Assembly (NCBI GenBank): GCA_002269645.1 | Contig: NIVC01001700.1 | Span: 77,923-141,922 of the forward strand | Source of the DNA: Macrostomum lignano | Taxonomy: Eukaryota | DNA: 64,000 nucleotides | Reading direction: 5' to 3' | Part shown: piece after piece, positions 5,410-50,910 of the stretch | Layout of the letters: every line of letters begins with the position of its first letter | How positions within the stretch are numbered: the stretch's first letter is position 1 | The notes under the pieces: generated by a model | Told to the model about the DNA's origin: nothing | The model's input: the letters and a program-made list of their open reading frames with translations, nothing else | Database searches by the model: none | Program-made: the position numbers and the translations under genes

Positions 5410-7252
5410 ATAAAGCTGCACATCTTCGCGCTGCAAGTGAGTCCCGCGTCCTTAAACACAGTCAGGACTTTCCGCAGGTTCCTTAAATGACTCGCTTCGT
5501 CTTGACCAGTAACGATGACGTCGTCAATGCAGGCTGCGCAGTGCTCGATGCCAACGAATAGACCGTCCATGACGCGCTGGAACATGCTGGGAGCCGTTGA
5601 AACCCCAAAAGGCAGTCATGTGTAGCGCAGCAGCCCCAGTGAGGTGTTGATAGTGCACAACTTTTGTGCGGCCTCGTCCAACGGAAGCTGTTGAAACGCC
5701 TGGCTGAGATCAATCTTCGAGAACTTCTTCCCGCCTGACAGTCGTGAGAAGAGCTCGTCAATGTTTGGCAGCGGGTATCCGTCCGGTTCTACGGCGGCGT
5801 TCACGGTCTGCTTGAAGTCGGCGCACACCTGGAGCCCGCCGTCAGACTTCATCACAGGGACGATCGGCGATGCCCAGTTGGACGACTTTACCGGTTGCAG
5901 AATCCCCTGGCTGATCTCCTTGCGTAGCTGTTGCTCCACCTTCTCTTTCAGTGCGAAGGGCACGGAGCGGGCCTTGAAAAACCGAGGATGCGCTCCTTCC
6001 TTGATGGCAATGGATAGAGGGGCGCCGTTGAATGTCCCCAGTTCCTTGAACACCTCGGGGAACTCACGCTGCACTTTTTCGATGTCGGAAGCCATTGAGG
6101 ACAGTCGTTGAACTGACCGCCAGTCCAGGCGCAGGCTGTGCAGCCAGTCCCTGCCGAGGAGATTCGGTCCGCTGCCGCCACAACTAGCAGTGGCAGCTGC
6201 AAGTGACTGTCCTGTGCCGCTACTTTGACATGGACAATCAATCTGCCAAGAATCTCGACGGCCTGGCCTGAATACGTGTTGAGACGGATGTCGGTTGATT
6301 CCAGCTGAGGTTCGCTCAGAAGCTTCTGGCGGTACGTCCGCTCGGAGACCAGTGACACGGAGGCGCCGGTGTCGATTTCCATCTTGCAGTCCTTCCCGTC
6401 GATCAGCAGACGAGTCGTGTAGGGCGGGACTTTACTTGGCTTCTTCGCATTGCCGATGTGATAGAGGGAGTAGGCGGTTCCGGGCGACTCCTGATCGCTT
6501 CCTTCCTCGACCTGGTGAGTTTGCTGATGCTGCTGCTGACGCGGCTGACGCGGTTGCTTCCATGCCTTGGATGCGTGCCCAGTCTTGTTGCAGTTGAAGC
6601 AGCGCCTGTTTAGAAACAGACATTGGCTAGGAAGGTGTCGAGATGACAGGCACCTGCTGCACGGCTTCCGGTCGCTATCAGACTGTTTCAGCTTCAGCAC
6701 AGCATCATCCGGCCGTCTATTCGTCTCTCCAGTCGCGCAGAGAACCTTACAGAAGCCCGCGGCCGACTCGTTAGTGAGTGTAATGTCTGTGGCGGACTGC
6801 AGCGTCAGAGATGCCTGAGATAGAAGCTGGCGCTGAATCTGCTGGTCGTTTATGCCACAGACGAGGCGATCACGCAGCATGTCGTCCAGCACGGTGCCGA
6901 AGTTGCAGTGCTCGGACAGCTTCCTGAGCTCCGCTATGTACGCAGACACGGACTCGTCCGACTGACGAACGCGGTTGTGGAACATGAAGCGCTGCACGAT
7001 TTCTGACTGCTTCGGGTTGAAATGTTTCTTTAGGAGCTCGCAGATCTGCGCATAGGACTTGTCTGTGAGCTTGTCTGGCGAGCACAGGTTCCTAGCTGCT
7101 TTGAATGTCTCACAGCCACATACGCTAAGCAGTAGAGCTCGCTTCTTGGTGTCATTTTCTACGTCGTTGGCTAGGAAATGCTGCTCAAGGCGTTCCTGAT
7201 ACTCAGGCCAGGATTCAACGGCGACGTCAAAAACGTCGAATCTAGAAGCCAT
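5410..7252 (-). pseudogene. Disabled gag-pol ORF
   Basis: A frameshift near 6180 (LPLLVV resumes as GGSGPNLLGRDWL in another frame). An in-frame TGA at 5618-5616 sits where RYT-R-LPFG expects Arg. YxDD reads CIDD, and the second zinc knuckle ends in W instead of C. Confidence 0.88.
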
Positions 7253-7256
7253 TAAG

Positions 7257-7274
7257 ATCCCATCCTCGTCGCCA
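7257..7274 (-). promoter_or_regulatory. Primer-binding site complementary to tRNA-Ser(GCU)
   Basis: Minus strand reads TGGCGACGAGGATGGGAT, an 18-nt match to the conserved metazoan tRNA-Ser(GCU) 3' end ...AUCCCAUCCUCGUCGCCA (recalled sequence). It lies 1 nt after the LTR end and 4 nt before the gag ATG. Confidence 0.88.
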
Positions 7275-7275
7275 C

Positions 7276-7471
7276 TGTAATAACTCACACGGACTCCACT
7301 GGTTAAGTAAGTTAGAACTTTCGAGAAAACTTGAGCGGCTGCACGCGCATATATATTTAATAAGCACGACGTACGTTAGTACACGATACACGTACACGCG
7401 AGGACGAGCAATCAATGAGGTGTAAATACGAGCTACTTAAACAAAAATCAACGTGCCCACGCAACCCTACA
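7276..7471 (-). repeat. 5' LTR (196 bp) of the Gypsy element
   Basis: On minus it starts TGTAGGG and ends TATTACA (TGTA...TACA inverted termini). It contains ATTAAA and a TATA-like tract and directly abuts the PBS. Confidence 0.75.
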
Positions 7472-8134
7472 CCCCCAAGCAACCTCAGATCAGTCCAGTG
7501 GCACTTTGCCACAGACTCAGTGTACCTTTTCTACCTTTTTTCTAGACAAGAGAAATGAAGAAATGAACGACTGGACTGAGATGATCATTTTTTCTTAGCA
7601 CATCTTGAGCGTAATCCCCAATTAAGGAGCGAACAAGTTTCCATGTGCTTTCTAATCCAATCGCTCATTGATGCTTGAGGCAAAGGGCTCTAGTGAGATG
7701 GATTAGTAACTTGTTGCGGTACGATTTAAGATGGACCATTTAAACAAATTCCTGCAGTCACTGTCCTCCAATTTATCCCCTCTGGCTCTGGTCTATCGCT
7801 GGCCACAGTGCATTTCGTGCCTGTTTATTTGTCCAGATTCTAAACATGGCAATTTCTACACAGACAACCCCGCGTCCGTCCCATTCCCTGAACATTTCTG
7901 ATTCCCAGAATTAACAAAATATTTACAAAAAAATCAAACCCAACTTGGTAGAAAAGCAACGTCCAAAATCTGCAGCAAAGAACAAGCTGAAGCCACAATG
8001 GGACAGAAATCCCCCCAGCAGGCAGATCCTGATTGGCTGAGAGCGCTTTCTCCGTCACTATAACATTTGGGCCTCGCTTCTGGGCCAGAAAATATTCTTA
8101 CAAGGACGATACAAAAACTGAAAAGCTTCAAGTT

Positions 8135-9294
8135 ATGATGAGCCAAGCGATACAGGAGGCTCCCATGAACTCAAGCGTCGGAGTTGAAAACGCCAGCAGC
8201 GCCGCTTACGGACTGCTAGAAGTTCAGCCGGAGGACGCCCTGATTGGCTGCCTGCTCGCACTGCTAGCCTGCGGCACAGTGCTAGGCAACGGCCTAGTGA
8301 TGCTGGCAGTGCTCAGCGAGCCCTGTCTCAGGACCGTTACTAACTACTTAATAGTTTCCCTAGCAACCGCCGACCTGCTCATGGGCGCAGTCGTGATGCC
8401 ATTCGCGGCCATCGCCCAGGCCACCCGCGAGCGCTGGCTGTTCGGACCGACCTGGTGCGATCTTTGGCACGCATTCGACGTGCTGAGCTCTACGGCCAGC
8501 ATCCTCAACCTGTGCATGATCGCGCTGGAGCGCTACTGGGCCGTGCGCAACCCGATGCGCTATCCCAGCCGCGTTACCAAGCGCCGCTGCGTGGCAATGA
8601 TCGCAGCCGTGTGGCTTTGCTCCAGCCTCATCAGCTTCCCCGCCATCGCTTGGTGGCGAGTCACCAGCCCGACCAGCCGCTTGCCCGGCGTGTGCAGCTT
8701 CACCAGCGACCCGGCCTACCTCATCTGCTCCTCCCTGGTGTCTTTCTATGCGCCCCTGTTAGTCATGGTGTTTGTCTATTGCAAAATCTACCGTACCGCC
8801 GCGCGTCTGGTCCGCAGCTGGCGCGACGGCGCCAAAGTCCTGCGCGGACACGGCGAGCAAGCAACCGTTGTGCTTCGAATTCACCGGGGCGGCGGCGGTC
8901 GCGGATTGGCTGAGGAGGTCGCCGACGACGCTGCAGACGATGCCGGAGCGGTAGAACATCACCGCGGCGGCGGCGGTGGCGGCTCGGCAACCCGGCGCAA
9001 GCAGTTCGCCAGATTCTCCCGCGAACGACGCGCCGCCAAGACTCTGGGCATTGTGATGGGCGTCTTCATCGCCTGCTGGCTGCCGTTCTTCGTCTGCAGC
9101 TCGCTGCTGGCGCTCAGCCTGAGCCTCGGCCCGCATGAGAAATCTCTTCTGGCCGTGGTGACCTGGCTGGGCTACTGCAACAGCGCCGTAAACCCAGTGA
9201 TCTACGCTCACTCGATGCGAGACTTCCGGCGCGCCTTCCTGCGCCTGCTGCGCTGCCGGCGGCGTCACCATCGGCCGGCGGTTTCAGCGACAAC

Positions 9295-9335
<41 letters not shown>

Positions 9336-9484
9336 TCAGACAGCGACAGCTCCTGCAGCATCGCCGAGCAGTTGAGGTTCAAAGCGGAGAGCTTCGCCAA
9401 TTGCGCACCTGCCCGGATCAAATTGCTGACGTCAGCAACTCGCTGACAGCTGGGGGAGCTGCAGAAGTCAGCGTTTCTCTGTGA
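8135..9484 (+). CDS. Dop1R2: Intronless biogenic-amine GPCR, invertebrate-type dopamine receptor (Dop1R2/DAMB class), ~449 aa, C-terminal Q13
   Basis: Seven TMs with class-typical motifs TNYLIVSLATADL, WCDLWHAFDVL (Asp3.32), LISFPAIAWWR, SSLVSFY (TM5 serines), LRIHRGG, AAKTLGIVMGVF, CWLPFF and NPVIY. N-terminal N-glycosylation sequons NSS and NAS. Start taken at ATG 8135, as the track start at 8033 is not ATG. Confidence 0.9.
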
Positions 9485-32535: not shown

Positions 32536-35500
32536 ATGATTTTCTTACCACCAGGTGATACTGCAGCAGCTTCGGATGAGGTCATCAGTCCGATTGTGCA
32601 GGACCCGGCAGAAAAAGCCGACACAGATGGGCCAACAGTTGATGTCGTTACTGTCAACGAGCCGTCAAAGCCTCGGCCGCTTCGAGAGCTGCTTTGCTGC
32701 TTCTGCTTTAATCGGCGCTCGTCCACTAGGAGGCGCCAACAACAGCAGCAGCAACAGCAGCACCACAACCATCACCATCATCACCATCACGGGCAGAATG
32801 GCCAGACATTCTCTATCGACCTGCTGGGACCGCGAGATCCCGACTTGGGCGATAAGATTTGTGCTGTTATTGACCTGGACGAAACTCTGGTGCACAGCTC
32901 ATTCAAGGTTGGGCATTGGCTTTGCTACCAGGTTTCCACTGGGCCAGCCTCCCAGATCCTCAGTTGCTGGGCCAGCCTCCCAGAGTGTCAGTTGCTGGGC
33001 CAGCCTCCCAGATCGTCAGTTGCTGGGCCAGACTCTCAGATCGTCAGTTGCTGGGCCAGCCTCCCAACTCTTCAGTTGCTGGGCCAGCCTCCCAAATCCT
33101 CAGTTGCTGGGCCAGCCTTCCAGATCCTCAGTTGCTGGGCCAGCTTCTCAGATCCCCAGTTGCTGGGCCAACCTCCCAGATCGTCAGTTGCTGGGCCAGC
33201 CTCCCAGACCCTCAGTTGCTGGGCCAGCCTCCCAGATCCTCAGTTGCTGGGCCAGCTTTTCAGATCCCCAGTTGCTAGGCCAGCTTCTCAGATCCCCAGT
33301 TGCTGGGCTAACCTCCCAGATCGTCAGTTGCTGGGCCAGCCTCCCAGATCGTCAGTTGCTGAGCCAGCCTCCCAGATCCTCAGTTGCTGAGCCATCCTCC
33401 CAGATCCTCAGTTGCTCAGCCACATCCTCCCAGATCGTCAGTTGCTGGGCCAGCCTCCCAGATCCTCAGTTGCTGGGCCAGCCTCCCAGATTCTCAGTTG
33501 CTGGGCCAGCCTCCCAGATCCTCAGTTGCTGGGCCAGCCTCTTAGATCCTCAGTTGCTCAGCCACATCCTCCCAGATCGTCAGTTGCTGGGCCAGCCTCC
33601 CAGATCCTCAGTTGCTGGGCCAGCCTCCCAGATTCTCAGTTGCTGGGCCAGCCTCCCAGATCCTCAGTTGCTGGGCCAGCCTCTTAGATCCTCAGTTGCT
33701 GGGCCAGCCTCTTAGATCCTCAGTTGCTGGGCCAGCCTCCCAGATCTTCAGTTGCTGGGCCAGCCTCCCAGATCCTCAGTTGCTGGGCAAACGTCCTTCA
33801 GGTCCTCAAAATAACATTTATATTCGACCTGAAATTAGCTCTCGACCTCGCTATATAATTTTTCTAACAGTTTGTCGATGAGCCGGACTTTGTCATCGAC
33901 GTTGAAATCGAAGGCCTGGTGCACCAGGTGTACGTGTTGAAGCGGCCATACGCGGACGAATTCCTGGAAAGAATGGGCCAGCTGTACGAATGCGTGCTCT
34001 TCACCGCCAGCCTCGCTAAGGTATTTCTTGCACCGTTAGCTCTCAATAGAACCTTTGTCCGCTGATTAGTGCTCAAGCCCCTAATTAATGTGGCCCCACG
34101 CGCGGAATCGAACCCGGGGTCACTGGCGATCGCGTTCTCCCAGAGTGTCATTTTAAACAGTAATATTTTCACCCGCAGTACGCAGACCCCGTGTCGGACC
34201 GTCTGGACCGGTGGTCCACATTCAAGCACCGCCTGTTTCGCGAGTCCTGCGTCCTTCACTGCGACAATTTCGTGAAGGACCTGGCCCAGCTGGGCCGGCC
34301 GGTTGACCGCTGCGTTATCATTGATAATTCGCCCGCGTCCTACATGTTCAATACGGAGAATGCGGTTCGTGTCCTTGGCTGGCTTGATTTACAGTCATCT
34401 GGATTGGAAAGCTCACAGACAGAAAACTGTAGTTCTTTAAGCTCTCATCTTTTTCAATTTTCGGGTCTGATGCTATCTGGATTTCAGAATCATTATATAA
34501 TCTTATTTCGACCTAGGTTTCGAGGTTTCAGAATCTTGATTTTAATGATTTGTGACCTGGATTTGATGATTTGTGACCTGGATTTGATGATTTGTGACCT
34601 GGATTTATTTAATTGTGACTTGAATTTGATGATTTGTGACCTGGATCTGATGATTTGTGACCTAGATTTGATGATTTGTGACCTGGATCTGATGATTTGT
34701 GACCTGGATTTGATGATTTGTGACCCGGATTTAATGATTTGTGACCTGGATTTGATGATTTTGACCTAGATTAGATGATTTGTGACCTGGATTTGATGAT
34801 TTTGACCTAGATTAGATGATTTGTGACCCGGGTTTGATGATTTTTGACCTGGATCTGATTATTTGTGACCTGGATTTGATTATTTGTGACCTGGATTTAT
34901 TTAACTGTGACTTGCATTTGATGATTTGTGACCTGGATTTAATGGTATGTGACCTGGATTTGGTGATTTGTGACCTGAATTTGATGATTTGTGACCTGGA
35001 TTTGATGATTTGTGACCTGGATTTAATGGTATGTGACCTGGATTTGGTGATTTGTGACCTGGATTTGATGATTTGTGACCTGGATTTGATGATTTGTGAC
35101 CTGGATTTGATTAGTTGTGAGCTGAATTTGGTGAGTCCTGACCTGGACTTGATCATTGTTACCTGAATTTATTGTTTTTTTACCTTCATTTGCTGATTGG
35201 TGCTCTAAATTTGATGACTTGTGATCCTTATTTAATCATAATTTGAGATCCGGATTAAAATGTTTTAGAATTATATGTCAAAATTAAGGTTCTAAATCTC
35301 ATTATTTTTGAAATTTGGGCTTCATGGTTTGCATCTTTGAATTACCATGACCCTGTCTGCTCCGCAGATCCGGGTGCACACCTGGGTGGGCGACCAGGCC
35401 GACACTGAGCTGCGCGACCTGCTACCTTATATGGAGCGGCTTGCTGCCGCGGCCTCCGTTCCTGAATTCCTTCGCGACTACCCGCCTCTGTCGCAGGCCC

Positions 35501-39889: not shown

Positions 39890-40086
39890 GGATGCTTACT
39901 ATTTGGGGATGCTTGCTATCTGGGGGATGCTTGCTATCTGGGAGGGGGATGCTTCCTATCTGGGGGATGCTTGCTATCTGGGAGGGGGAATGCTTCCTAC
40001 CTGGGGGATGCTTGCTATCTGGGAGGGGGGATGATTCCTATTTGGGGGATGCTTGCTATCTGGGGGATGCTTGCTATCTGGGGGGA
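39890..40086. repeat. G-rich minisatellite, ~19-22-bp unit GATGCTTGCTATCTGGGGG; a second, shorter copy at 42418-42490
   Basis: Direct reading. Confidence 0.85.
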
Positions 40087-42973
40087 TATTAAAGAGCCAC
40101 TATGTCGAACATTAAAGAGCCATCATTACATTAAGGTGCCACCAGGTCAAACATTAAAGAGCCACCATGTCTAACATTAAAGAACCACCATGTCGAACAT
40201 TAAAGAGCCACCATGTCAAACATAAAACAGCCAACATTTCGAAAATTAAAGAGCCACCATGTCAAAAATTAAAGAGCCACCATGTCGAACATTAAAGAGC
40301 CACCATGTCAAAGATAAAAGAGCCACCATGTCAAACATTGAAGAGACCCCCTGTCAAACATTAAAGAGCCACCATGTCGAACATAAAGAGGCACCATGTA
40401 AAACATATACGTAACTCCATGTCAAACATTGAAGCGACACCATGTCGAACATAAAAGAGCCACCATGTCAAACATTAAAGAGCAACCATGTCAAACATTA
40501 AAGAGCAACCATGTCAAACATAAAAGAGCCAACATTTCGAAAATTAAAGAGCCACCATGTCAAACATTAAAGAGCCACCATGTCGAACATTAGAGAGCCA
40601 CCATGTCAAACATAAAACAGACACCATTAAGAACATTAAAGAGCCACCATGTAGAACATAAAACAGCCACCATTTCGAAAATTAAAGAGCCACTATGTCA
40701 AACATTAAAGAGCCACCATGTCAAACATTAAAGAGCCACCATGTCAAACATAAAACAGCCACCATTTCGAAAATTAAAGAGCCACTATTTCAAACATTAA
40801 AGAGCCACCTTGTCAAAAATTAAAGAGCCACCATGTCGAACATTAAAGAGCCACCTTATCAAACATTAAAGAGCCACCATGTCGAACATAAAAGAGCCAC
40901 CATGTAGAACATAAAATAGTCACCATTTTAAACATGAAAGTGCCACCATGTAAAACATTAAAGAGCTACCATGTCAAACATTAAAGAGCCACCAGGTCAA
41001 GCATATACATGACTCCATGTCAAACATTGAAGAGCCACCATGTCGAACATAAAAGGGCCACCATGTCAAATATTAAAGAGCCACCATGTCAAACATTAAA
41101 GAGCCACCAGGTCAAACATGAAAGTGCCACCATGTCAAATATTAAAGAGCCACCATGTCAAACATTAAAGAGCCACCAGGTCAAACATGAAAGTGCCACC
41201 ATGTAAAACAATAAAGAGCCACCATGTCGAACATTTAAGAACCACCATGTCAAACATAAAATAGCCACCATGTGAAACATATGCATGACTCCATGTAAAA
41301 CATTAAAGAGCTACCATATCAGACATATACATGACTCCATGTCAAACATATACGTGACTCCATGTTAGACATTAAAGAGCCACCATGTCGAACATTAAAG
41401 AGCTAACATGTTAAAAAAACAAGAGCCACCATGTCAAACAAATACATGACTCCATGTCAAACATTGAAGAGACACCATGTCTAACATTAAAGAGCCACCA
41501 TGGCAAACATATACATGACTCCATGTCAAACATTAAAGAGACACCATGTCTAACATTAAAGAGCCACCATGTCGAACATTAAAGAGCCACCATGTCAAAC
41601 ATTAAAGAGCCACCATGTCTAACATTAAAGAGCCACCATGTCGAACATTAAAGAGCCACCATGTCAAACATAAAACAGCCAACATTTCGAAAATTAAAGA
41701 GCCACCATGTCAAACATAAAAGAGCCACCATGTCGAACATTAGAGAGCCACCATGTCAAACATAAAACAGACACCGTTAAGAACATTAAAGAGCCACCAT
41801 GTCGAACATTAAAGAGCCACCATGTAGAACATAAAACAACCACCATTTCGAAAATTAAAGAGCCACTATGTCAAACATTAAAGAGCCACCATGTCAAACA
41901 TTAAAGAGCCACCATGTCAAACATAAACATGACTCCATGTCAAACATTGAAGAGACACCATGTCTAACATTAAAGAGCCACCATGGCAAACATATACATG
42001 ACTCCATGTCAAACATTAAAGAGACACCATGTCAAACATTAAAGAGACACCATGTCAAACATTAAAGAGCCATAATGTCAAACATTAAAGAGCCACCATG
42101 TCGAACATTAAAGAGCCACCATGTCGAACATTAAAGAGCCACCATGTCAAACATAAAAGAGCCACCATGTAAAACATAAAAGAGCCACTATGTCAAACAA
42201 TAAAGAGACACCATGTCAGACATTAAGAAAACCCCGAATCAAACATAAGAGAGCCACCATGTAGAACATAAAAGAGCCACTATGTCAAACATTAAAGAGC
42301 CACCAAGTCAAACATAAAATTTACACAATTTCAAACGTAAAAGTAAGCGTCATGCAAATTTTAAAGGAGCAACTATAGAGCTAAGGAAATTGTAGCACTA
42401 GCTACTTATTTTATGGTGGATGCTTACTTTTTCGGGATGCTTGCTATCTGGGGGATGCTTGCAATCTGGGGGATGCTTGCTGTCTTGGGATGATTTCTTT
42501 TTGCATTACACTTTATTTGAGCAGTTTGTCTGTCGTCTTTGTGAAGGCTTTATTTGGCTGTCTTTTTGTTACTTGTAGAGAACAGAGATTCTATCCAGAT
42601 GTCCCCCAACGGGGGGCGAAGATTGCTAGTCAGCCCTAAAAATTCAGCTGATCTACATAAATTCGAAAATACAAATGCATACATACGCTCGTATTTAAAT
42701 TAAAACTCCACCAGCCAACTAGACTTTGACCATCCGACCACAGTAAGTAAAGTGTCCCAGTGGTGCAATAGATTTCTATGGTGCTATTAATAGTTTCTGC
42801 AACAGCAAGCCCGCTGCTCTGCTACCAAAGGATTCGAGCGTCGTTATCTTCATTATATTGGAATTTGATCTCTGCGGTGCCAAGAGTTCGCCAGAGCAGC
42901 TCATGTTTGCGCAGAGCGTATTTAAAATTGAAATTCTACACTAGCGAAAGTTCCACCTATTTACTTGTATAGA

Positions 42974-44489
42974 ATGGGGAAATTTGCTGTGCAACAATTT
43001 CTGCTTCTGGCCCTGCCGCTTCTACACCTGGCAGCGCCGCCGGCCTCCGCTGCTGCCATCGACGCGCTGCGTTCGGCGGCCGCAGCGGCGGGCCACTCGC
43101 TCGACGCCTGGTGCATGGCCTACAGCTGCCCCGGCCAGTCCTACGCCTGCGCTGTGAACTCCGACTGCCGCGCCTGTCTCACCTGCCTGCACAGCTGCGG
43201 CGGCTCCGGCGACACCTGCTCTGCCGCCTGCCTCTACCGCTGCCGGGCTGAGCAACTGCTCACCGACTTTCTCACCTGCGCCGTGACTGAGCACAACTGC
43301 GTCGAGTTGAGTCCGCCTGCGGTGGCGGACGGGGTGAAGGATCGGGATGAGGATCAGGACGAATGCCGGCCTGAGCAGCTGCAGGTCTAAACTTAAGCAT
43401 AAACAATTAGAGATTTTAAAGATTGTCTTGATCTCATTAGATGTCTTATTAGGTGTCTCATTTGACGTCTCATTAGGAGCCTCATTTGACGTCTCATTAG
43501 GTGCCTCATTTGACGTCTCATTAGGTGTCTTTGTAGGTTCCATATTAGGTGTCTCATTATGCATCTCATTAGGCATCCCATTAGGTGTCTCATTAGGTGT
43601 CTCATCATGCATCTCATTAGGCACCTCATTAGGTGTCTCACTAGGTGCCTCATTAGGTGTCTCATTAGTAGGCGTCTCATTAGGTGCCTCATTAAGTGTC
43701 TCGTTAGGTGTCTCATTAGGTGTCTCATTAGGCGTCTCATTAGGTCCTTATTAGTGTTTCAATAGGTGCCTCATTCGGTATCTCATCAGGTGTCTCATTA
43801 GGTGCTCATTAGTGTCTCTTTAGGCATTTCATTAGGCGTCTCATTGGGTGTCTCATTAGGTGTCTAGTTGTGTTACCCATTAGACGCTTCATTAGGCGCC
43901 TCATTAGGTGTCTCATTAGGCGTCTCGTTAGGTTGTCCCAATATGTTTGGTGCAATCTAACAGGTTAAATTTACTTTATTCATCATGCTCGCAGGCCTGG
44001 GGCCCGCCAGCCACTCTGGCCGAAGCCGATGGCTTGTGGCTGGCCGTCCGCGGCGGCCACCCGTTCCACGACTGTCATCCGTGCCGCGGCGAGCTGCTGG
44101 AGGCCGAGTCCGGCCAGACCACCGGCGGCTTCTTATTCGAAGGCTCGCCAGTGAAGCTGCAGCGCCGGGTGGTGGCGGCCTGGCCGGAGAACGGCACCCT
44201 GCTGCTGGGCCTCACCAAGGTCGGCCAGGCGGTGACGGAGGCCTGGCGGCTCAGCTGGCCGTCCGAGGAGGCCAGAGGCCAGCGCTTGATGCTGAGCTAC
44301 TGCGGCTCGGCCGCCGGCGCCTGGCGCTACCGCGGCCGGCTGGAACTGGGCCGCCGGGCCGCCGGCCTCGGTGCCGGCCAGCGGCTGTCTCCGAGCGGCG
44401 GCGGCTTCGCCTGCTCTGTCCGGCTGGAAGGCGACGACTGCCGGCAGCTGTGGGGGCGGCCGGCGGAGCACGACGCCGACGAGCTCTGA
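42974..44489 (+). CDS. Secreted violaxanthin de-epoxidase-like (VDE/VDL/VDR-type) Cys-rich lipocalin; exons 42974-43384 and 43995-44489 (~301 aa)
   Basis: Signal peptide MGKFAVQQFLLLALPLLHLAAPPASA. Cys domain WCMAYSCPGQSYACAVNSDCRACLTCLHSCGGSGDTCSAACLYRCRAEQLLTDFLTCAVTEHNCV has the VDE N-domain spacing. Lipocalin SCR1-like GLWLAVRGGHPFHDCHPC, then TEAWRL and LSYCG...WRYRG. The intron is phase 0; its donor CAG|GTCTAA is weak. Confidence 0.8.
43430..43930. repeat. Minisatellite, 12-bp unit ATTAGGTGTCTC (intron of the VDE-like gene)
   Basis: Direct reading. Confidence 0.92.
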
Positions 44490-44919
44490 TTGGGTGGACA
44501 AGCTGGGCCGATCGTGACATGTCGGTTTTGGCCGCGGATACTGTATTTTCGAATTCCTTTTAATAATCCAGCATAGTAACCAAGGGCTGAGACTTAGTCC
44601 GACAGTACAATCGAATAAATTTCAAGGTCTTTTATGCCTTCGTTTAGTAGCAGCAACTACTTGTATTAGCTTGTATCAGATGAACTTGCCAATCTATGCT
44701 ATTCATTGCGCTGCCAAGGTCGCCATGACTCTGGCATTCGTGCTGCGCCAATATCCCTTTCAATCAAATTTACTGCAAAGGATTGGAAACTTGGAGTAGC
44801 AATTCAGTCTTTTAATTAGATCGAATAATGAGCTTCAGTTTATGTGAGTGCGTGACCAGAATGACTGATGGCGTTGCTTTGGCGACTGCTCGGCTTTTGT
44901 GTCTTGTAAGGCATGTATA

Positions 44920-45358
44920 GTGAGTAAGAAAATGAGTAAGTGAGTAAGTAAGTGAGTAAGTGAGTAAGTAAGTGAGTAAGTAAGTAAGTGAGTAAGTAAG
45001 TGAGTAAGTAAGTAAGTGAGTAAGTAAGTGAGTAAGAAAGTAAGTAAGTAAGTGAGTAAGTAAGTGAGTAAGAAAGTAAGTAAGTGAGTAAGAAAGTGAG
45101 TAAGTGAGTAAGTGAGTAAGAAAGTAAGTAAGTGAGTAAGAAAATGAGTAAGTGAGTAAGTAAGTGAGTAAGCGAGTAAGTAAGTGAGTAAGTAAGTGAG
45201 TGAGTAAGTAAGTGAGTAAGAAAATGAGTAAGTGAGTAAGTAAGTAAGTGAGTAAGTAAGTGAGTAAGAAAATGAGTAAGTGAGTAAGTAAGTGAGTAAG
45301 TAAGTAAGTGAGTAAGAATATGAGTGAGTGAGTAAGTAATTCATTAGGTAAGCGAGTC

Positions 45359-45397
<39 letters not shown>

Positions 45398-45425
45398 GAG
45401 TAAGTAGGTGAGTAATTAAGTGAGT
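44920..45425. repeat. Compound microsatellite (TAAG/TGAG)n
   Basis: Direct reading. Confidence 0.95.
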
Positions 45426-47142
45426 AATTATATGTACCATCGACAAATGTGCTCAGTATTCGTGAATCCTCTACAATCCGAAATAAAAATACTGGCAATA
45501 TTTCTCTTCCTAGCTTTTTAAATTTCTTGTTTTATGGGCCATAAATCCTTTTTGGCTTTGGCGCAAACTCCCGGGAAGGCGATAAAAAATCCGAGTGTTG
45601 CGAATGCTGGCGCACTTGCGGACACGATTGCAGTTTTTAATTGGGACACCCTTGCGTGTCTGCATCTGGGCCCATGTCCCCGCTGTCAGGTCAGCTCTGC
45701 ACTGTAAAATCCTCAAAATTATGAGCCCGCGGCAGTACAGAGCAGCTCTGTCGGACTGACTCTATCCACCAAACATCTTTCGAGATGAGCATGCTTAAGC
45801 TGGGCATAATTCGTGGCTTAAGATTGTCGAAGCAGTTATATTGCTTCTGGGAACCGAGTTTATTTGTGCTTCAATATCTGATGCCCTCTTGTGTTCTTGT
45901 ATGTATTCTTGGATGTTTTGCTATGTTTATCATGTTCATTCATGTTTATGTCATATTCAACCCGTACCTTGACGCTGAACTTCCTCACGAAATCAATTTG
46001 GTTTCAGAAAATCGCTTCGGAAATTGGTACTGAATCGGTCAGGTGAATTTGTTTACTTACGAAGTAATTTCGACTTCTCATCTGCTGTTCTGGCAGCTGC
46101 AGAGGCCACTCCAGTCCCCTGAGAGAGCCAGCAGGCAGATTGGCCAGCACAGGTGTATTAATAAGATGCAGATTTGAAGGCCTGGACAGGCTTTGTCCCT
46201 CGCATGAGCACTGGCTGACTTGAGGAATTCCAGAGCATTCAATGTGTACTTTTTTGAGCACAGATGAGGCGTACAGATCAGTGATTTGCTCCAGCAAAGA
46301 GCGGATTGAAGCTTCCGTATCCGATCTTCTTCTCCTAGTAACCGAGGGGTTAACTCGCTTTGCTGCTACCGCGAGCCCCAGGGGCAGAATTCCACTGACT
46401 CGAGACAAGAGACCAGGGACATGCTAAAGTGCTGCCTCTCCATAGAGATCACTGAGAGTTCAATGCTCCAGAGTTTAGAGTTCACGATGTCTTCTCACTC
46501 GCTTCAACTCAGTTTACAAATCAGAGTCTACAAAAATACCTATTGGTGTCCATTAATATCGATAAATATTCATTCATATTTATTAATATCCTTGAATATC
46601 CCTGAATATTCATGCTGCAGAACTTTAGAATTTTTGCTTTAAAATTTACTCTAGTCTGCATGTACTTTTGCGCCTTTTGGAACAGCAAAAACGGTAGCCA
46701 GCTATGCATGCAATATTCTCCTGGGTATACAAGTGCGAGGGAAGCTGATAGCTACTGGTTAATCCCAGTTCTCATTCATCTGAGGTCCTTGACCGCACCC
46801 CGATCTGATCTGATGCCCTGGGGCCGAAAACTTTCAGTGAGCTCTTGGGCAAGCGGTCAATACCGCTGCTTCTGGCGAAATAAGAAAAAAAGTTTAAAAC
46901 GAAGCATTGAATTCGTGCAAAATAACGATGAGTTCCAATTCGAATCGGCCTTCAAAAATTGATTGGCTGAAGGCTCGATGATCGTTGCTATATTTAGAGG
47001 CGAAGAACGCGCGTGACCAAAAGTTTTTCTTAAACGTAACAAAAGCTGTTCATTCGAGATGGTTGAGCCAGCCAGACTAACATAAGCGATGCCATCCTTC
47101 CACTATCACTAAGGCTGAGGGAGGCCGATCCACGTGGGCAGC

Positions 47143-48093
47143 CAGGGGCGTCGCCATGGATTTTATGGTGGGGGGACAAAGCCAAGAATTCAACATGTAC
47201 ATGTACATGACTAAATTCCTAAATTTCCATTATTTTGAAAATCGTGTTTTGGGCGCCCCAGGCACTCATTTTAGCGCCCCAGGCACTCATTTTAGCGCCG
47301 CAGGCACTCATTTTAGCGCCGCAGGCACTCATTTTAGCGCCGAAAGCACTCATTTTGGCGCTGCAGGCACTCATTTTAGCGCCGCAAGCACTCATTTTGG
47401 CGCCGCAGGCACTCATTTTAGCGCGGCAGGCACTCATTTTAGCGCCGCAAGCACTCATTTTGGCGCCGCAGGCACTCATTTTAGCGCCGCAGGCACTCAT
47501 TTTAGCGCCGCAAGCACTCATTTTGGCGCCGCAGGCACTCATTTTAGCGCCGCAAGCACTCATTTTAGCGCCGCAAGCACTCATTTTGGCGCCGCAGGCA
47601 CTCATTTTAGCGCCGCAAGCACTCATTTTGGCGCTGCAGGCACTCATTTTGGCGCCGCAGGCACTCATTTTAGCGCCGCAGGCACTCCTTTTAGCGCCGC
47701 AGGCACTCCTTTTAGCGCCGCAGGCACTCCTTTTGGCACCGCAGGCACTCATTTTGGCGCTGCAGGCACTCATTTTGGCGCTGCAGGCACTCATTTTAGC
47801 GCCGCAGGCACTCATTTTGGCGCCGCAGGCACTCATTTTGGCGCCGCAGGCACTCATTTTAGCGCTACAGGCACTCATTTTGGCGCCGCAGGCACTCATT
47901 TTGGCGCCGCAGGCACTCATTTTGGCGCTGCAGGCACTCATTTTTGCGCCGCAGACACTTATTTTGGCGCCAAAGGCGCTATATTTTGGCGCCCTGAAGA
48001 AAAATTTTTGATTACTACAACAGGTCACAAGGTGGGGTTGGGGGGACAAAGCATTGGCATATCCCCCCCTGTCCCCCGGTGGCGAGGTGCCTG
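47143..48093. mobile_element. hAT-type non-autonomous element (951 bp) with 8-bp TSD and internal 21-bp minisatellite
   Basis: Left end CAGGGGCGTCGCCA, right end TGGCGAGGTGCCTG (11/14 inverted match). TSD TGGGCAGC at 47135-47142 and 48094-48101. The unit GCAGGCACTCATTTTAGCGCC fills about 47250-47990. Confidence 0.88.
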
Positions 48094-48256: not shown

Positions 48257-49318
48257 CTAGCGGCCCGCTCTATGGTAGGCGCAGCGCCGCTGACCTCCAG
48301 GCGACTTTCGCGAGTTCATCGCCGCGGCCAGGCGGCCCAGGCCGGACTCCAGCTTGGTGTCCTCCCTGCCCAGCCCGCCGAGGCCGCCGCCGCCGCTGCA
48401 GGCGTCAGCCAGCGCCTCGACAGGACCGCGGGACAGCAGGCAGCTGACCGCGATGAAGATTGACTGCAGCGCCTGCAGCATGTAGTGCGCGTACCACAGG
48501 CAGGGGCCGTCGCAGCCGCGGAACCGGGCCACGGACAGCAAGCCGCTCGCCTGCACCGCCAGGCTGGTGACGGCGAACTTTGACAGCGCCCGGCAGCGGA
48601 CGCAGGCGGCGGCGATGGCCGGCGCTGACAGCTCCGGCGCGTCCAGCTTCGCTGCCGAGGCTGCTGCGGAGGCGGGCAGCAGCGGCGCCAGCTGCAGCCC
48701 GTAGGCCAGCAGGGCAGGCAGGAAGAGCAGCCACGCGTGCGACATCGCTGCCCGCTGCAGCTCGTCCACCGCCTGCGGCGCCGGCTGCTGCTGCTGCTGC
48801 TCGCTGCAGTTCCGCTGGCGCCGGAAAATCTGCGGCAAGCTGGCGTTGTAGCGCGCCGTGTCCAGGCCGGCCGGGCCGCCCGCCAGGCCCGCGGCCAGGA
48901 AGGGAGCGGCGAACAGGGCGCTGATGGCCAGGCGGCGCAGCTTCGACAGCCAGCTGGCGTCGACATCAGCAGCCGATGCGTGCAAGTGGCGCCGCCACCG
49001 TCGGCGTTGTCGCCAGAAGCTCACGGCGATGCTGAGAGTCCAGGACGCGGTGAGCAGCCCGAACAGGTGAGCGCTGGCGTTGGCCGCCGTCAGCCAGTCG
49101 GTCCAGCCGGCACCGAGCCGCTCCGCGCCGCAGGCGACCAGCTGGGAGGCGCCACTGGCCAGGTGCAGCGACAGTGGCGACAGCAGCGGCCAGCTGTACA
49201 AGCGGCGCAGCTCCGAGATTGACGTCGCCAAGATCACGTGACAGCAGGTGACCAGCACGGAGACGGTCAGGCAGATCAGCGGCAGAGGTGCCGCAGCTTC
49301 GTCAGCAGCCTCCGCCAT
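48257..49318 (-). CDS. Class B2-like (Methuselah/adhesion-type) 7TM protein, intronless, essentially no ectodomain (353 aa)
   Basis: ICLTVSVLVTCCHVIL...SELRRLYSWPLLSPL (TM1-TM2, PELRNLPG-like), AHLFGLLTASWTLSIAVSFWR (TM3) and WYAHYMLQALQSIFI (TM7, LQG.FIF-like). Confidence 0.72.
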   Translation of the reverse strand: MAEAADEAAAPLPLICLTVSVLVTCCHVILATSISELRRLYSWPLLSPLSLHLASGASQLVACGAERLGAGWTDWLTAANASAHLFGLLTASWTLSIAVSFWRQRRRWRRHLHASAADVDASWLSKLRRLAISALFAAPFLAAGLAGGPAGLDTARYNASLPQIFRRQRNCSEQQQQQPAPQAVDELQRAAMSHAWLLFLPALLAYGLQLAPLLPASAAASAAKLDAPELSAPAIAAACVRCRALSKFAVTSLAVQASGLLSVARFRGCDGPCLWYAHYMLQALQSIFIAVSCLLSRGPVEALADACSGGGGLGGLGREDTKLESGLGRLAAAMNSRKSPGGQRRCAYHRAGR

Positions 49319-49759
49319 GGCTCAGTGCACCCAGAGGGCGCTGGCCGCCGAAGCCAGAGCGGTCTTTTGCCTCAGGGCCGAGTGGAGCAGCGGCCAATCA
49401 GATGTCGCCTTTGATTAGCGAATCTCCAGCTGAGACTGCTGGCTCCCGGGGGCTGCCGCTGCCAGCTGAGGGGGACTTCGAGCTGTGCCCTCGAGGTAGG
49501 GATCAGGAGAGAAGGGTTAATGCTGCAATGCTGGTGTATTCAACCCTTGATCTGCATTGCTGATTATTCAATACTGTCTGTCAGGTCGAATAGAATAGCT
49601 GACTGCAACCTGCAACTTTCCAAGGCTGGTGTGTACTTTTAGTGGGTAAAAGTTGTTTATTTACTTCTTATGAGCACTGCAGCTAGTTTGGGGTTCGGGG
49701 GGCATCACTGCTACGTTAGGGTTGAGGGGAACTTAGGGTACTTAGTGAATTTGCTTGGC

Positions 49760-50910
49760 GCACTGTAAGGTTTGAGGGCGCCACTGTAGGGCTTGGGCGC
49801 CACTGTAGGGTTTGGGGCGCCACTGTAGGGTTTGGGGGCGCCACTGTAGGGTTTGGGGGCGCCACTGTAGAGTTTGGGCGCGCCACTGTAGGGTTTGGGG
49901 GTGCCACTGTAGGGTTTGGGGCGCCACTGTAGGGTTTGGGGGCGCCACTGTAGTGTTTGGGGCGCCACTGTAGGGTTTGGGGGCGCCACTGTAGGGTTTG
50001 GGGGCGCCACTGTAGGGTTTGGGCGCGCCACTGTAGGGTTTGGGGGTGCCACTGTAGGGTTTGGGGCGCCACTGTAGGGTTTGGGGCGCCACTGTAGGGG
50101 TTGGGGGCGCCACTGTAGGGTTTGGGGGCGCCACTGTAGGGGTTGGGGGCGCCACTGTAGGGTTTGGGGGCGCCACTGTAGGGTTTGGGGGCGCCAATGT
50201 AGGGTTTGGGCGCGCCACTGTAGGGTTTGGGGTGCCACTGTAGGGTTTGGGGCGCCAATGTAGGGTTTGGGCACGCCACTGTAGGGTTTGGGGGCGCCAC
50301 TGTAGGGTTTGGGGCGCCAATGTAGGGTTTGGGGCGCCACTGTAGGGTTTGGGGCGCCACTGTAGGGTTTGGGGGCTCCACTGTAGGGCTTGGGGCGCCA
50401 CTGTAGGGCTTGGGGCGCCACTGTAGGGTTTGGGGCGCCACTGTAGGGTTTGGGGGCGCCACTGTAGGGCTTGGGGCGCCACTGTAGGGTTTGGGGCGCC
50501 ACTGTAGGGTTTGGGGGCGCCACTGTAGGGTTTGGGGGGCGCCACTGTAGGGTTTGGGGGCGCCAATGTAGGGTTTGGGCGCGCCACTGTAGGGTTTGGG
50601 GTTGCCACTGTAGGGCTTGGGGGGCCACTGTAGGGTTTGGGGCGCCACTGTAGGGTTTGGGGGCTCCACTGTAAGGTTTGAGGGCGCCACTGTAGGGTTT
50701 GGGGCGCCACTGTAGGGTTTGGGGGCGCCACTGTAGGGTTTGAGGGCGCCACTGTAGGGTTTGGGGCGCCACTGTAGGGGTTGGGGGCGCCACTGTAGGG
50801 TTTAGGGCTCCACTGTAGGGTTTGGGGCTCTACTGTAGGGTTTGGGGCGCCACTGTAGAGTTTGGGGGCGCCACTGTAAGGTTTCGGGTGCCACTGCACT
50901 GTAGGTTTTG
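49760..50910. repeat. G-rich minisatellite, 20-21-bp unit GGGCGCCACTGTAGGGTTTG(G)
   Basis: Direct reading. It is flanked by the 17-bp direct repeat CTTAGTGAATTTGCTTG at 49741 and 50983. Confidence 0.95.

What the first reader, a model, noticed from the sequence alone, without database searches (positions are those of the whole stretch)
42974..44489. Animal gene with the architecture of plant/algal violaxanthin de-epoxidase (VDE/VDL/VDR): secreted Cys-rich lipocalin
Seen: joining two exons gives signal peptide + Cys-rich domain (C-x4-C-x6-C-x5-C-x5-C-x3-C-x6-C-x3-C...C-x6-CV) + lipocalin starting GLWLAVRGGHPFHDCHPC. Known: this Cys spacing followed by a G-x-W-x3-G-x-N-P-x-F/Y-D-x3-C lipocalin is the hallmark of VDE and its algal relatives VDL/VDR, which act on xanthophylls in the thylakoid lumen. 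My hand alignment to Arabidopsis VDE (recalled) keeps the Asp of FDA (HDC) and Tyr198 (SYCG vs YYRG). The QDDWY Asp177/Asp178 pair becomes TEAWR, and the Glu-rich tail is missing. Inference: a secreted carotenoid/xanthophyll-binding or -modifying protein in an animal, from algal horizontal transfer or a patchy ancient family. It has a host-style GT-AG intron filled with minisatellite and sits among clearly metazoan genes, which argues against algal contamination. Similar genes may already be auto-annotated in other invertebrates, but I know of no functional description.
Basis: partly seen in the sequence, partly recalled or inferred. Interest (0 to 1): 0.85.

Follow-up and report, generated by a model that had tools for sequence, protein, structure and literature searches.

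The report
Flatworm gene of the violaxanthin de-epoxidase family
A diatom-eating flatworm (Macrostomum lignano) carries in its own genome a transcribed two-exon gene of the enzyme family that plants and algae use to open carotenoid epoxides; other alga-eating animals have uncharacterised relatives, which may be the unknown enzymes that remodel dietary algal pigments.

Summary
Exons 42974-43384 and 43995-44489 (+) splice in phase 0 to a 301-aa protein. It is identical to the GenBank protein BOX15_Mlig011564g1 of Macrostomum lignano, whose annotation was built from RNA-seq. It passes the Pfam VDE model (55.7 bits, cut-off 25.7). All 10 N-terminal cysteines of plant VDE are kept. The predicted fold is a helical Cys-rich domain plus an 8-strand lipocalin barrel, and its best PDB matches are the VDE lipocalin structures.

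The equivalents of the catalytic Asp177/Trp179/Tyr198 are Glu219/Trp221/Tyr239, the state seen in the algal VDL and VDR proteins. The pH-switch residues and the Glu-rich tail of VDE are absent. The C-terminus ADEL fits the ER-retention pattern.

It is not diatom contamination. It lies on a 326-kb contig with an animal GPCR, has host-like GC3, and has a syntenic second copy on a 1.1-Mb contig. Its closest relatives are short, signal-peptide-bearing VDE-like proteins of bivalves, abalone, chiton and amphioxus, not diatom VDE, VDL or VDR.

Homologues are already auto-annotated, but I found no functional study. A 2026 review still treats the family as one of photosynthetic eukaryotes. The most likely role, inferred and not shown, is conversion of dietary epoxy-xanthophylls in the secretory pathway.

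The parts
42919..42927 (+). TATA-like element TATTTAAAA, about 50 nt upstream of the ATG (candidate core promoter)
   Evidence: Read directly from the sequence. Not tested.
42974..43384 (+). Exon 1 (aa 1-137): signal-peptide-like N-terminus (aa 1 to about 26, with ASA|A), the Cys-rich helical domain and an acidic linker
   Evidence: Identical to the annotated protein.
43112..43300 (+). Cys-rich domain core, C47 to C109. These ten cysteines align with Arabidopsis VDE C9, C14, C21, C27, C33, C37, C46, C50, C65 and C72.
   Evidence: Alignments. AF2 predicts helices 45-106 with pLDDT 76-95.
43385..43994 (+). GT-AG intron, phase 0, 610 bp, 41% GC
   Evidence: Junction supported by the RNA-seq-based annotation.
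43432..43933 (+). 12-bp minisatellite (TCTCATTAGGTG, about 42 copies) filling the intron
   Evidence: TRF and pattern scan. The intron of the second copy is longer (822 against 610 bp) and only 89.5% identical where it aligns.
43995..44489 (+). Exon 2 (aa 138-301 plus stop): lipocalin domain and C-terminal tail
44031..44351 (+). Eight-strand lipocalin beta-barrel (aa 150-256)
   Evidence: AF2 strands 150-157, 169-173, 178-185, 188-200, 205-212, 215-224, 234-243 and 247-256. The top Foldseek hits are 3cqn/3cqr.
44238..44246 (+). Codons for E219-A220-W221, equivalent to VDE D177-D178-W179 (proton donor and carotenoid-stacking Trp)
   Evidence: Residue roles from PMC13181403.
44298..44300 (+). 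Codon for Y239, equivalent to the catalytic Tyr198 of VDE
   Evidence: PMC13181403.
44475..44486 (+). C-terminal ADEL. It fits the ER-retention pattern [KRHQSA]-[DENQ]-E-L.
   Evidence: regular-expression test; the pattern itself is recalled from PROSITE PS00014. Present in both worm proteins with a complete C-terminus and in none of the other 24 relatives checked.
44614..44619 (+). AATAAA polyadenylation signal, 125 nt after the stop codon
   Evidence: Read directly from the sequence.

Best explanation
This is a genuine, transcribed Macrostomum lignano gene. It encodes a divergent member of the violaxanthin de-epoxidase (VDE) family and belongs to a short form found in animals and other heterotrophs.

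Architecture: signal peptide, a 10-Cys helical domain, an 8-strand lipocalin barrel, no Glu-rich tail, and in the worm an ER-retention-like ADEL end.

Likely mechanism (inferred): the protein folds with disulfides in the ER or secretory pathway of cells that handle ingested diatoms. It binds an epoxy-xanthophyll such as diadinoxanthin, violaxanthin or fucoxanthin(ol) in the barrel, stacked on Trp221. Glu219 protonates the 5,6-epoxide with help from Tyr239.

The outcome would be either a cofactor-free tautomerisation like that of algal VDL or an ascorbate-dependent de-epoxidation like that of VDE. The Glu-for-Asp state and the lack of the VDE pH switch make the VDL-like, constitutive mode more likely.

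Shown: the gene model, the host location, family membership, the fold, and retention of the catalytic-position residues. Inferred: the substrate, the chemistry, the compartment and the tissue.
For: Gene and host:
- The spliced product is identical to the RNA-seq-derived GenBank model.
- The locus is on a 326-kb contig. An NIF phosphatase gene lies about 7 kb upstream and a rhodopsin-type GPCR (E=1.5e-73) about 33 kb upstream.
- A syntenic second copy sits on a 1.13-Mb contig.
- GC3 is 0.85, against 0.80 for the GPCR and 0.89 for another ORF in the window.

Family:
- Pfam VDE scores 55.7 bits.
- The profile of the short forms hits the VDE lipocalin sequence 3cqn at E=1.1e-30. Other lipocalins score 1e-6 or worse.
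- The AF2 model has pLDDT 78.7 and pTM 0.71. Its top four PDB matches are 3cqn/3cqr.

Catalytic apparatus:
- All 10 N-terminal Cys are kept, plus C167 (VDE C118) and C286 (VDE C249).
- D114, W179 and Y198 are kept and D177 is Glu. That is the state described for VDL and VDR (PMC13181403).
- VDL1 is a cofactor-free violaxanthin/neoxanthin tautomerase (PMC7056318).

Ecology:
- The named animal relatives are oysters, ark clam, pearl oyster, abalone, chiton and amphioxus, which are filter feeders or algal grazers by general knowledge. Named protist relatives include a vampyrellid and a chytrid.
- The worm is cultured on the diatom Nitzschia.
- Bivalves and tunicates convert dietary fucoxanthin by allene-to-acetylene conversion and by epoxide opening (PMC6949322). 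To my knowledge the enzymes responsible are unknown.
Against: - There is no biochemical or expression-pattern evidence.
- The worm protein is the most divergent member. Pfam matches only half of the domain. Conserved motifs have changed: NP.YDCF.CQ has become HPFHDCHPCR, and YEG has become YRG.
- The two worm copies differ by 7 non-synonymous and 3 synonymous changes (pN/pS 0.81). Constraint since the duplication is therefore not demonstrable.
- The second copy carries a 1-nt deletion.
- No transcript-derived contig encoding the exact protein is on record in the protein collection. The oyster homologue has over a hundred.
- Oysters have Ser at the Asp177 position, so catalysis is not obviously conserved across the animal forms.
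- A related short form also occurs in a green alga, so the link with alga-eating is not exclusive.
Confidence: 0.5

Rival explanations
1. The protein is a non-catalytic carrier. It would be a secreted or ER lipocalin that only binds and transports a hydrophobic ligand (a carotenoid, retinoid, sterol or fatty acid), as crustacyanin or apolipoprotein D do.
For: Most lipocalins are binders (PMC13181403). The short-form profile also hits ApoD, bilin-binding protein and crustacyanin at E 1e-6 to 1e-4. Oyster homologues lack an acidic residue at the Asp177 position. The worm sequence has lost several family-conserved motifs.
Against: The VDE-specific 10-Cys domain is fully retained, and ordinary lipocalins lack it. 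The polar Glu219 and Tyr239 are kept inside an otherwise hydrophobic barrel; the review reads this pattern as a sign of enzymatic activity in VDL and VDR. Every characterised member of the family (VDE, VDL1, VDL2) is an enzyme.
Confidence: 0.25
2. The gene is a decaying or neutral relic. A VDE-like gene acquired long ago is now drifting in the worm without a selected function.
For: pN/pS is 0.81 between the two copies. There is a frameshifting 1-nt deletion in the second copy. P0001 has the longest branch among the animal-type forms in the tree. The Pfam match is half-length. No transcript-derived contigs are on record.
Against: The 301-codon ORF is intact. All 12 structural cysteines shared with VDE and the four active-site-position residues are retained, although identity to any relative is only about 25-30%. 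The gene is in the RNA-seq-based annotation with a correctly spliced intron. Ten substitutions are too few to estimate pN/pS. The deletion may be an assembly error; an older assembly gave a full-length product for that copy, though through a different splice model (P0002).
Confidence: 0.12
3. The locus is contamination from the food diatom, or a very recent transfer from it (or from another culture-associated eukaryote such as a thraustochytrid).
For: The worms are fed Nitzschia curvilineata. Diatoms carry VDE, VDL and VDR genes (PMC2483416). An oyster EST of this family was once dismissed as algal contamination.
Against: The locus is embedded in 326-kb and 1.13-Mb worm contigs with the same NIF neighbour on both and, in the window, an animal GPCR. 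GC3 is host-like. The clade HMMs give animal-type 96.9 bits over the full length, against VDL 68 (N-terminal part only), VDR 43 and plant-like VDE 38. VDE or VDL forms (alone or together) are the sister group in 9 of 200 NJ bootstraps and VDR in none.
Confidence: 0.01

Closest known systems
Short VDE-like proteins of other animals. RefSeq names some of them 'violaxanthin de-epoxidase, chloroplastic-like': Crassostrea gigas XP_034326102, Haliotis rufescens XP_046346709, Branchiostoma floridae XP_035689847. Others occur in Saccostrea, Pinctada, Tegillarca and the chiton Liolophura.
   Same: Signal peptide, 10-Cys domain, lipocalin and no Glu-rich tail, at about 260-300 aa. Extra conserved cysteines are shared (worm C131, C164, C240). 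This group's HMM gives the best score, 96.9 bits over residues 41-257.
   Different: Identity is only 21-27% in the A1 alignment. The worm has an inserted acidic linker, an intron, a C-terminal ADEL and many changed motif residues. The mollusc genes are intronless and match the whole Pfam domain at 147-169 bits. None has been characterised.
VDL1 and VDL2 of chromalveolate algae (violaxanthin/neoxanthin and diadinoxanthin/allenoxanthin tautomerases)
   Same: Same three-part fold family. Glu at the Asp177 position, with Trp179 and Tyr198 kept. A Glu-rich tail that is weak or absent. VDL1 needs no cofactor, which is a plausible model for an animal enzyme.
   Different: VDLs are plastid-targeted and about 450-550 aa long, and they carry the FWENWY and YYTG motifs. 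The worm matches the VDL HMM only up to residue 179, at 68 bits. VDL alone is the NJ sister group in 3 of 200 bootstraps.
Plant violaxanthin de-epoxidase (Arabidopsis NPQ1; PDB 3cqn/3cqr)
   Same: Identical order of the 10 N-terminal Cys, differing only in one spacer (x8 in VDE, x6 in the worm). Lipocalin barrel; top structural match. D114, W179 and Y198 conserved.
   Different: Asp177 is Glu. The pH-switch or dimerisation residues D98, D117, H121, H124, H168 and D206 are replaced and R138 falls in a gap. There is no Glu-rich C-terminal domain and no transit peptide.
VDR (VDE-related protein of plants and algae; function unknown)
   Same: Glu at the Asp177 position, conserved Cys-rich domain, no Glu-rich tail.
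   Different: The VDR representatives found here are long. Complete ones are about 490-600 aa, with the Cys-rich domain starting near position 226 of a 510-position group HMM, and they carry a VLDNG motif. The worm matches only the Cys-rich part of the VDR HMM (42.6 bits), and VDR is never its sister group in the bootstraps.
Carotenoid-binding animal lipocalins (crustacyanin) and apolipoprotein D
   Same: Eight-strand lipocalin barrel, secretory pathway, hydrophobic ligand.
   Different: They have no Cys-rich N-terminal domain. The sequence relation is only marginal (E 1e-6 to 1e-4, against 1e-30 for VDE).

Membership tests
VDE family in the broad sense (Pfam PF07137) | Scores above the curated Pfam gathering threshold | tested here: met
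   55.7 bits against a cut-off of 25.7, E=6.4e-15. The match covers profile positions 3-125 of 242 only.
VDE family in the broad sense (Pfam PF07137) | N-terminal domain with the 10 conserved cysteines | tested here: met
   C47, 52, 59, 65, 71, 75, 82, 86, 102 and 109 align with AtVDE C9, 14, 21, 27, 33, 37, 46, 50, 65 and 72. These positions are Cys in all 21 sequences compared.
VDE family in the broad sense (Pfam PF07137) | Central lipocalin barrel related to the solved VDE domain | tested here: met
   Short-form profile against 3cqn_A: E=1.1e-30. AF2 predicts 8 strands plus a C-terminal helix. Foldseek ranks 1-4 are 3cqn/3cqr, at E about 1e-4 and target TM-score 0.46-0.57; the margin over other lipocalins is small.
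VDE family in the broad sense (Pfam PF07137) | Polar catalytic-position residues in the barrel (Asp/Glu177, Trp179, Tyr198) | tested here: met
   E219, W221 and Y239 by alignment. Their position inside the modelled barrel was not inspected.
Canonical xanthophyll-cycle VDE (EC 1.23.5.1) | Asp at position 177 | tested here: not met
   Glu219.
Canonical xanthophyll-cycle VDE (EC 1.23.5.1) | pH-activation and dimerisation residues (D98, D117, H121, H124, R138, H168, D206) | tested here: not met
   The worm has E, P, E, E, gap, G and W at these positions.
Canonical xanthophyll-cycle VDE (EC 1.23.5.1) | Glu-rich C-terminal domain | tested here: not met
   The protein ends 15 residues after the last conserved Cys (C286).
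Canonical xanthophyll-cycle VDE (EC 1.23.5.1) | Thylakoid-lumen targeting | tested here: not met
   The N-terminus is a short hydrophobic signal-peptide-like stretch (MGK, a hydrophobic core, then ASA|A), and the organism has no plastid. No signal-peptide predictor was available.
Canonical xanthophyll-cycle VDE (EC 1.23.5.1) | Ascorbate-dependent de-epoxidation of violaxanthin | not testable with these tools
   Needs an enzyme assay.
VDL (algal tautomerases) | Groups with the VDL clade | tested here: not met
   The VDL HMM gives 68 bits, N-terminal part only, against 96.9 for the animal short forms. VDL alone is the NJ sister group in 3 of 200 bootstraps.
VDL (algal tautomerases) | Glu at position 177 with Tyr198 kept | tested here: met
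   PMC13181403.
VDR (VDE-related) | Groups with the VDR clade and has the long N-terminal extension | tested here: not met
   The VDR HMM matches only residues 34-113 (42.6 bits). VDR is never the sister group. The worm has no N-terminal extension.
Short signal-peptide VDE-like forms of animals and other heterotrophs (undescribed group) | Signal peptide, 10-Cys domain, lipocalin with the extra Cys of the 'YCG' and 'DC' motifs, no tail, about 260-300 aa | tested here: met
   The A1 alignment gives near-invariant C131, C167 and C240, and the A2 alignment makes the column of worm C164 invariant. This group gives the best HMM score. Monophyly of the group is not resolved: the NJ backbone is unsupported.

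The most novel reading that the evidence does not exclude
The short VDE-like proteins of alga-eating animals, including this flatworm gene, are the long-sought enzymes that open or tautomerise the 5,6-epoxide of dietary algal xanthophylls. Such reactions would include fucoxanthinol to halocynthiaxanthin or mytiloxanthin, and conversions of diadinoxanthin and violaxanthin. On this reading the animals acquired the genes as intronless copies by ancient transfer from an algal or protist donor.
Probability: 0.3. Interest if true: 0.8.

Novelty: new variant of a known kind. Interest (0 to 1): 0.62.

Why it matters
The VDE family is treated as an invention of photosynthetic eukaryotes. A 2026 review discusses it only for them, and the one animal sequence noticed in 2008 was dismissed as contamination.

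Chromosome-scale assemblies now show bona fide copies in molluscs, amphioxus and this flatworm. Marine invertebrates are known to remodel dietary fucoxanthin, peridinin and related pigments by allene/acetylene conversion and epoxide opening. To my knowledge the enzymes are unknown, and the VDE family performs just this kind of chemistry.

Macrostomum lignano is transparent, is fed on a single diatom, and has RNAi and transgenesis. The hypothesis can therefore be tested directly in it. It would also be a clean case for studying how a 'plastid' enzyme family came to work in an animal secretory pathway.

Tried and rejected
- A single-sequence search of PDB gave only spurious WD40 matches. The family profile was needed.
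- The word-indexed homologue search found only the worm's own proteins with the single sequence. With alignment A1 it found only 9 proteins and missed even the alignment's own mollusc and amphioxus members, apparently because low-complexity words filled the capped list of 8,000 candidates. A trimmed alignment worked better.
- The exhaustive representative search supplied the real relatives.
- The first tree run timed out. The second left out the query by mistake. It was redone with the query.
- Shared-intron test for vertical descent: rejected. Five mollusc genes are intronless. The three amphioxus introns fall after aa 81.67, 125 and 173.33. The worm intron lies 12 codons upstream of the conserved Gly, against 2 codons for the nearest amphioxus intron.
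- Shared synteny among animals: none seen. The neighbours are NIF in the worm, IPK in amphioxus, PX/Vps5 in Pinctada, and glycosyltransferase 92 and a kinase in the chiton.
- Compositional test for foreign origin: negative, because GC3 is host-like.
- Selection test between the two worm copies: uninformative, with only 10 substitutions.
- Further copies in the window: none.
- Literature searches for functional work on animal VDE-like proteins, or for Macrostomum carotenoid metabolism or gene transfer, found nothing relevant.
Full report
**1. What is there**

The + strand between 42974 and 44489 holds a two-exon gene. Exon 1 runs from the ATG at 42974 to 43384 and is followed by GT. Exon 2 starts at 43995 after a pyrimidine-rich tract and AG, and ends with TGA at 44487-44489. 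The junction is phase 0 and the product has 301 residues.

The 610-bp intron is 41% GC, against 67% and 75% for the exons. It is almost wholly a 12-bp minisatellite, TCTCATTAGGTG, with about 42 copies. A TATA-like TATTTAAAA lies about 50 nt upstream of the ATG. An AATAAA lies 125 nt after the stop.

**2. Whose gene it is**

The spliced product is 100% identical over its full length to GenBank BOX15_Mlig011564g1 of the free-living flatworm Macrostomum lignano. UniRef already names it 'VDE lipocalin domain-containing protein'.

The locus is on contig NIVC01001700.1 (326 kb) of assembly GCA_002269645.1. From the coordinates, the window corresponds to about 77,923-141,922 of that contig.

The GenBank annotation of this assembly is a genome-guided transcriptome built from RNA-seq (PMC5730564). 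The annotated 43384/43995 junction is therefore transcript-derived.

The window also holds these features:
- a rhodopsin-family GPCR ORF at 8033-9484 (7tm_1, E=1.5e-73);
- a retrotransposon gag on the minus strand at 5948-7288;
- an exon of an NIF/CTD-phosphatase-like gene at 34191-34769.

A second copy lies on a 1.13-Mb contig with the same NIF neighbour.
- Its exons are 98.8-99.0% identical to the window copy and its unique flanks 97.7-98.0%.
- Its intron is 822 bp against 610 bp, and only 89.5% identical where it aligns.
- It has a 1-nt deletion at the position of window 44006 that shifts the frame.
- An older assembly gave a full-length product for this copy, but only through a different splice model (P0002). 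The deletion may therefore be an assembly error; this is unresolved.

**3. Not contamination**

The worms are fed the diatom Nitzschia curvilineata, and diatoms have VDE, VDL and VDR. Four observations nevertheless exclude contamination or recent transfer:
- The gene sits in long worm contigs at two syntenic loci.
- Its GC3 (0.85) is like that of the neighbouring animal GPCR (0.80) and of another ORF in the window (0.89).
- HMMs built from each clade score the worm protein as follows: animal short forms 96.9 bits and other short forms 90.2 bits, both over the whole domain; algal VDL 68 bits (N-terminal part only); VDR 43 bits; plant-like VDE 38 bits.
- In 200 neighbour-joining bootstraps its sister group is a short form of unknown origin (mainly P0004, from a metagenome) in 126 and named animals in 26. 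VDE or VDL forms, alone or together, are the sister in 9, and VDR in none.

**4. Family membership and fold**

- Pfam PF07137 (VDE) is passed at 55.7 bits against a cut-off of 25.7, but only over profile positions 3-125 of 242.
- The exhaustive search of 1.84 billion representatives found 97 relatives at E of 1e-3 or better. Apart from the worm's own copies, all have E above 1e-13 and 23-38% identity.
- An alignment with 16 short forms covers the whole protein. Invariant residues are C47, C52, C59, C65, C71, C86, C102, C109, W152, D163 and G251.
- The profile of that alignment hits the Arabidopsis VDE lipocalin sequence 3cqn at E=1.1e-30. Other lipocalins (sandercyanin, ApoD, bilin-binding protein, crustacyanin) score 1e-6 or worse.
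- AlphaFold2 on the alignment gives pLDDT 78.7 and pTM 0.71. The model has a helical Cys-rich domain (residues 45-106), eight strands (150-256) and a C-terminal helix.
- The four best PDB matches by Foldseek are the VDE lipocalin structures 3cqn and 3cqr (E about 1e-4, target TM-score 0.46-0.57). Ordinary lipocalins follow closely.

**5. Functional residues**

I aligned the worm protein with Arabidopsis VDE. The plant sequence was recalled from memory. Its numbering reproduces the residues named in the literature, and its lipocalin part agrees with the 3cqn alignment.

Retained:
- all ten N-terminal cysteines;
- C167 (VDE C118) and C286 (VDE C249);
- D163 (D114), W221 (W179) and Y239 (Y198).

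Asp177 is Glu219. According to a 2026 review, D177 and Y198 are the catalytic residues and W179 holds the carotenoid. In VDL and VDR, D177 is replaced by Glu while Y198 is kept (PMC13181403).

The residues behind the pH-dependent activation of VDE are not conserved. D98, D117, H121, H124, H168 and D206 are E, P, E, E, G and W in the worm, and R138 falls in a gap. There is no Glu-rich tail.

Other features:
- The N-terminus looks like a signal peptide (MGK, a hydrophobic core, then ASA|A). This is by eye; no predictor was available.
- There is one NGT sequon at N203.
- The C-terminus ADEL fits the ER-retention pattern [KRHQSA]-[DENQ]-E-L. The pattern itself is recalled from PROSITE PS00014. It occurs in both worm proteins that have a complete C-terminus and in none of the other 24 relatives checked.

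**6. Relatives in other organisms**

Named members of the short form:
- bivalves: Crassostrea/Magallana, Saccostrea, Pinctada, and Tegillarca with three genes;
- other molluscs: Haliotis and the chiton Liolophura;
- cephalochordates: Branchiostoma;
- protists and fungi: the vampyrellid Leptophrys and the chytrid Quaeritorhiza haematococci.

Other related short forms come from Tara Oceans metatranscriptomes and from the green alga Micractinium.

RefSeq calls some of the animal proteins 'violaxanthin de-epoxidase, chloroplastic-like'. The mollusc proteins match the entire Pfam domain at 147-169 bits.

Gene structure differs between lineages. The coding sequence is intronless in Saccostrea, Pinctada, Tegillarca, Haliotis and Liolophura. 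Branchiostoma lanceolatum has three introns, none at the worm's position. No synteny is shared. The deep branches of my neighbour-joining trees are unsupported.

The pattern suggests an ancestrally intronless gene with later, independent intron gains. I read that as favouring an old transfer (or transfers) from a eukaryotic donor. It does not exclude an ancient eukaryotic paralogue with many losses.

**7. What it most likely does**

All characterised members of the family act on 5,6-epoxy-xanthophylls:
- VDE removes the epoxide reductively, using ascorbate.
- VDL1 tautomerises violaxanthin to neoxanthin without a cofactor. It keeps about 20% of its activity at neutral pH (PMC7056318).
- VDL2 is proposed to convert diadinoxanthin to allenoxanthin.

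Bivalves and tunicates convert dietary fucoxanthin by allene-to-acetylene conversion and by opening of the epoxide (PMC6949322). To my knowledge the enzymes are not known.

By general knowledge, the animals that carry the gene feed on algae. The chytrid's species name suggests the green alga Haematococcus as host, and vampyrellids are known as algal predators.

I therefore propose that the worm protein binds a diatom epoxy-xanthophyll in its barrel within the ER or secretory pathway. Glu219 and Tyr239 would open the epoxide, more likely in the constitutive VDL-like manner than in the pH-gated, ascorbate-dependent VDE manner. This is inference from homology and ecology and has not been demonstrated.

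**8. Caveats**

- The worm protein is the most divergent animal member. It has lost conserved motifs: NP.YDCF.CQ has become HPFHDCHPCR.
- pN/pS between the two copies is 0.81, on only ten changes.
- No transcript-derived contig with the exact protein is in the protein collection. The oyster cluster has 111 members, most of them about 1-kb contigs from sequencing-run assemblies.
- Oysters carry Ser at the Asp177 position.

A binding-only role or a drifting relic therefore remain real alternatives.

**9. Novelty**

The gene and its animal homologues are already in the databases under automatic names. In the searchable literature I found only two mentions of animal sequences:
- a 2008 remark that an oyster EST of this family was probably algal contamination (PMC2483416);
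- a passing mention of a VDE family in the Manila clam genome (PMC5499747).

The 2026 review still describes VDE, VDL and VDR as proteins of photosynthetic eukaryotes. The finding is thus a real, undescribed variant of a known enzyme family, sitting in a genetically tractable animal that eats a single diatom species.

Noticed in passing
window 40088-42319 (flanked by 40026-40084 and 42434-42489): A 2.2-kb satellite of a 23-bp unit (ATTAAAGAGCCACCATGTCAAAC, about 97 copies, 80% matches) lies directly upstream of the gene. It is bracketed on both sides by about 3 copies of an 18-bp repeat (GGGGGATGCTTGCTATCT).
   Followed up: no
window 44919-45427: An AGTGAGTAAGTA-type tandem array (periods 12, 20 and 48) lies about 430 bp downstream of the stop codon. 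It creates long spurious ORFs on the minus strand.
   Followed up: no
window 47253-47993: A 21-bp tandem repeat (GCGCCGCAGGCACTCATTTTA, 35 copies, 91% matches) lies inside open reading frames of about 260-330 aa on both strands. The unit is a multiple of three, so it could encode a 7-residue peptide repeat.
   Followed up: no
window 8033-9484 (+): An uninterrupted 483-aa ORF encodes a rhodopsin-family GPCR (7tm_1, E=1.5e-73, GC3 0.80 in the 7TM part). It is the clearest animal gene in the window.
   Followed up: partly
window 5948-7288 (-): A retrotransposon gag / aspartyl-protease-like ORF of 446 aa.
   Followed up: no
window 48257-49318 (-) and 49742-50899 (-): Two long GC-rich ORFs of 353 and 385 aa; the first has GC3 0.89. 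Neither has a Pfam match at E of 1e-3 or better. They may be exons of an uncharacterised host gene.
   Followed up: no
L002 10001-11727 (contig NIVC01000067.1): The second worm copy has a 1-nt deletion at the position of window 44006, which truncates the annotated product to 189 aa. A protein from an older assembly (P0002) carries this copy's substitutions but avoids the frameshift through a different splice model. It is open whether the deletion is real or an assembly error.
   Followed up: partly
protein P0008 (KAJ3084678.1, Quaeritorhiza haematococci): This chytrid VDE-family protein (Pfam VDE, 144.5 bits) is named 'Vitamin D3 receptor' in GenBank. That is almost certainly a wrong expansion of the abbreviation VDR (VDE-related).
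   Followed up: partly
proteins P0012, P0130, P0137, P0010: The oyster, pearl-oyster and related forms have Ser at the position of the catalytic Asp177/Glu. Abalone, chiton, amphioxus and the worm have Glu. The bivalve lineage may use the neighbouring residue or may have changed function.
   Followed up: no
L005 and proteins P0005, P0139, P0140 (Tegillarca granosa, CM056612.1): The ark clam has at least three VDE-like genes on one chromosome, two of them numbered consecutively (KUTeg_010742 and KUTeg_010743). This points to local duplication in bivalves.
   Followed up: no
protein P0098 (550 aa; ENA and Logan, contig of 7.9 kb): A VDE-like domain is fused behind an unrelated N-terminal region of about 290 aa. 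The organism is unknown.
   Followed up: no
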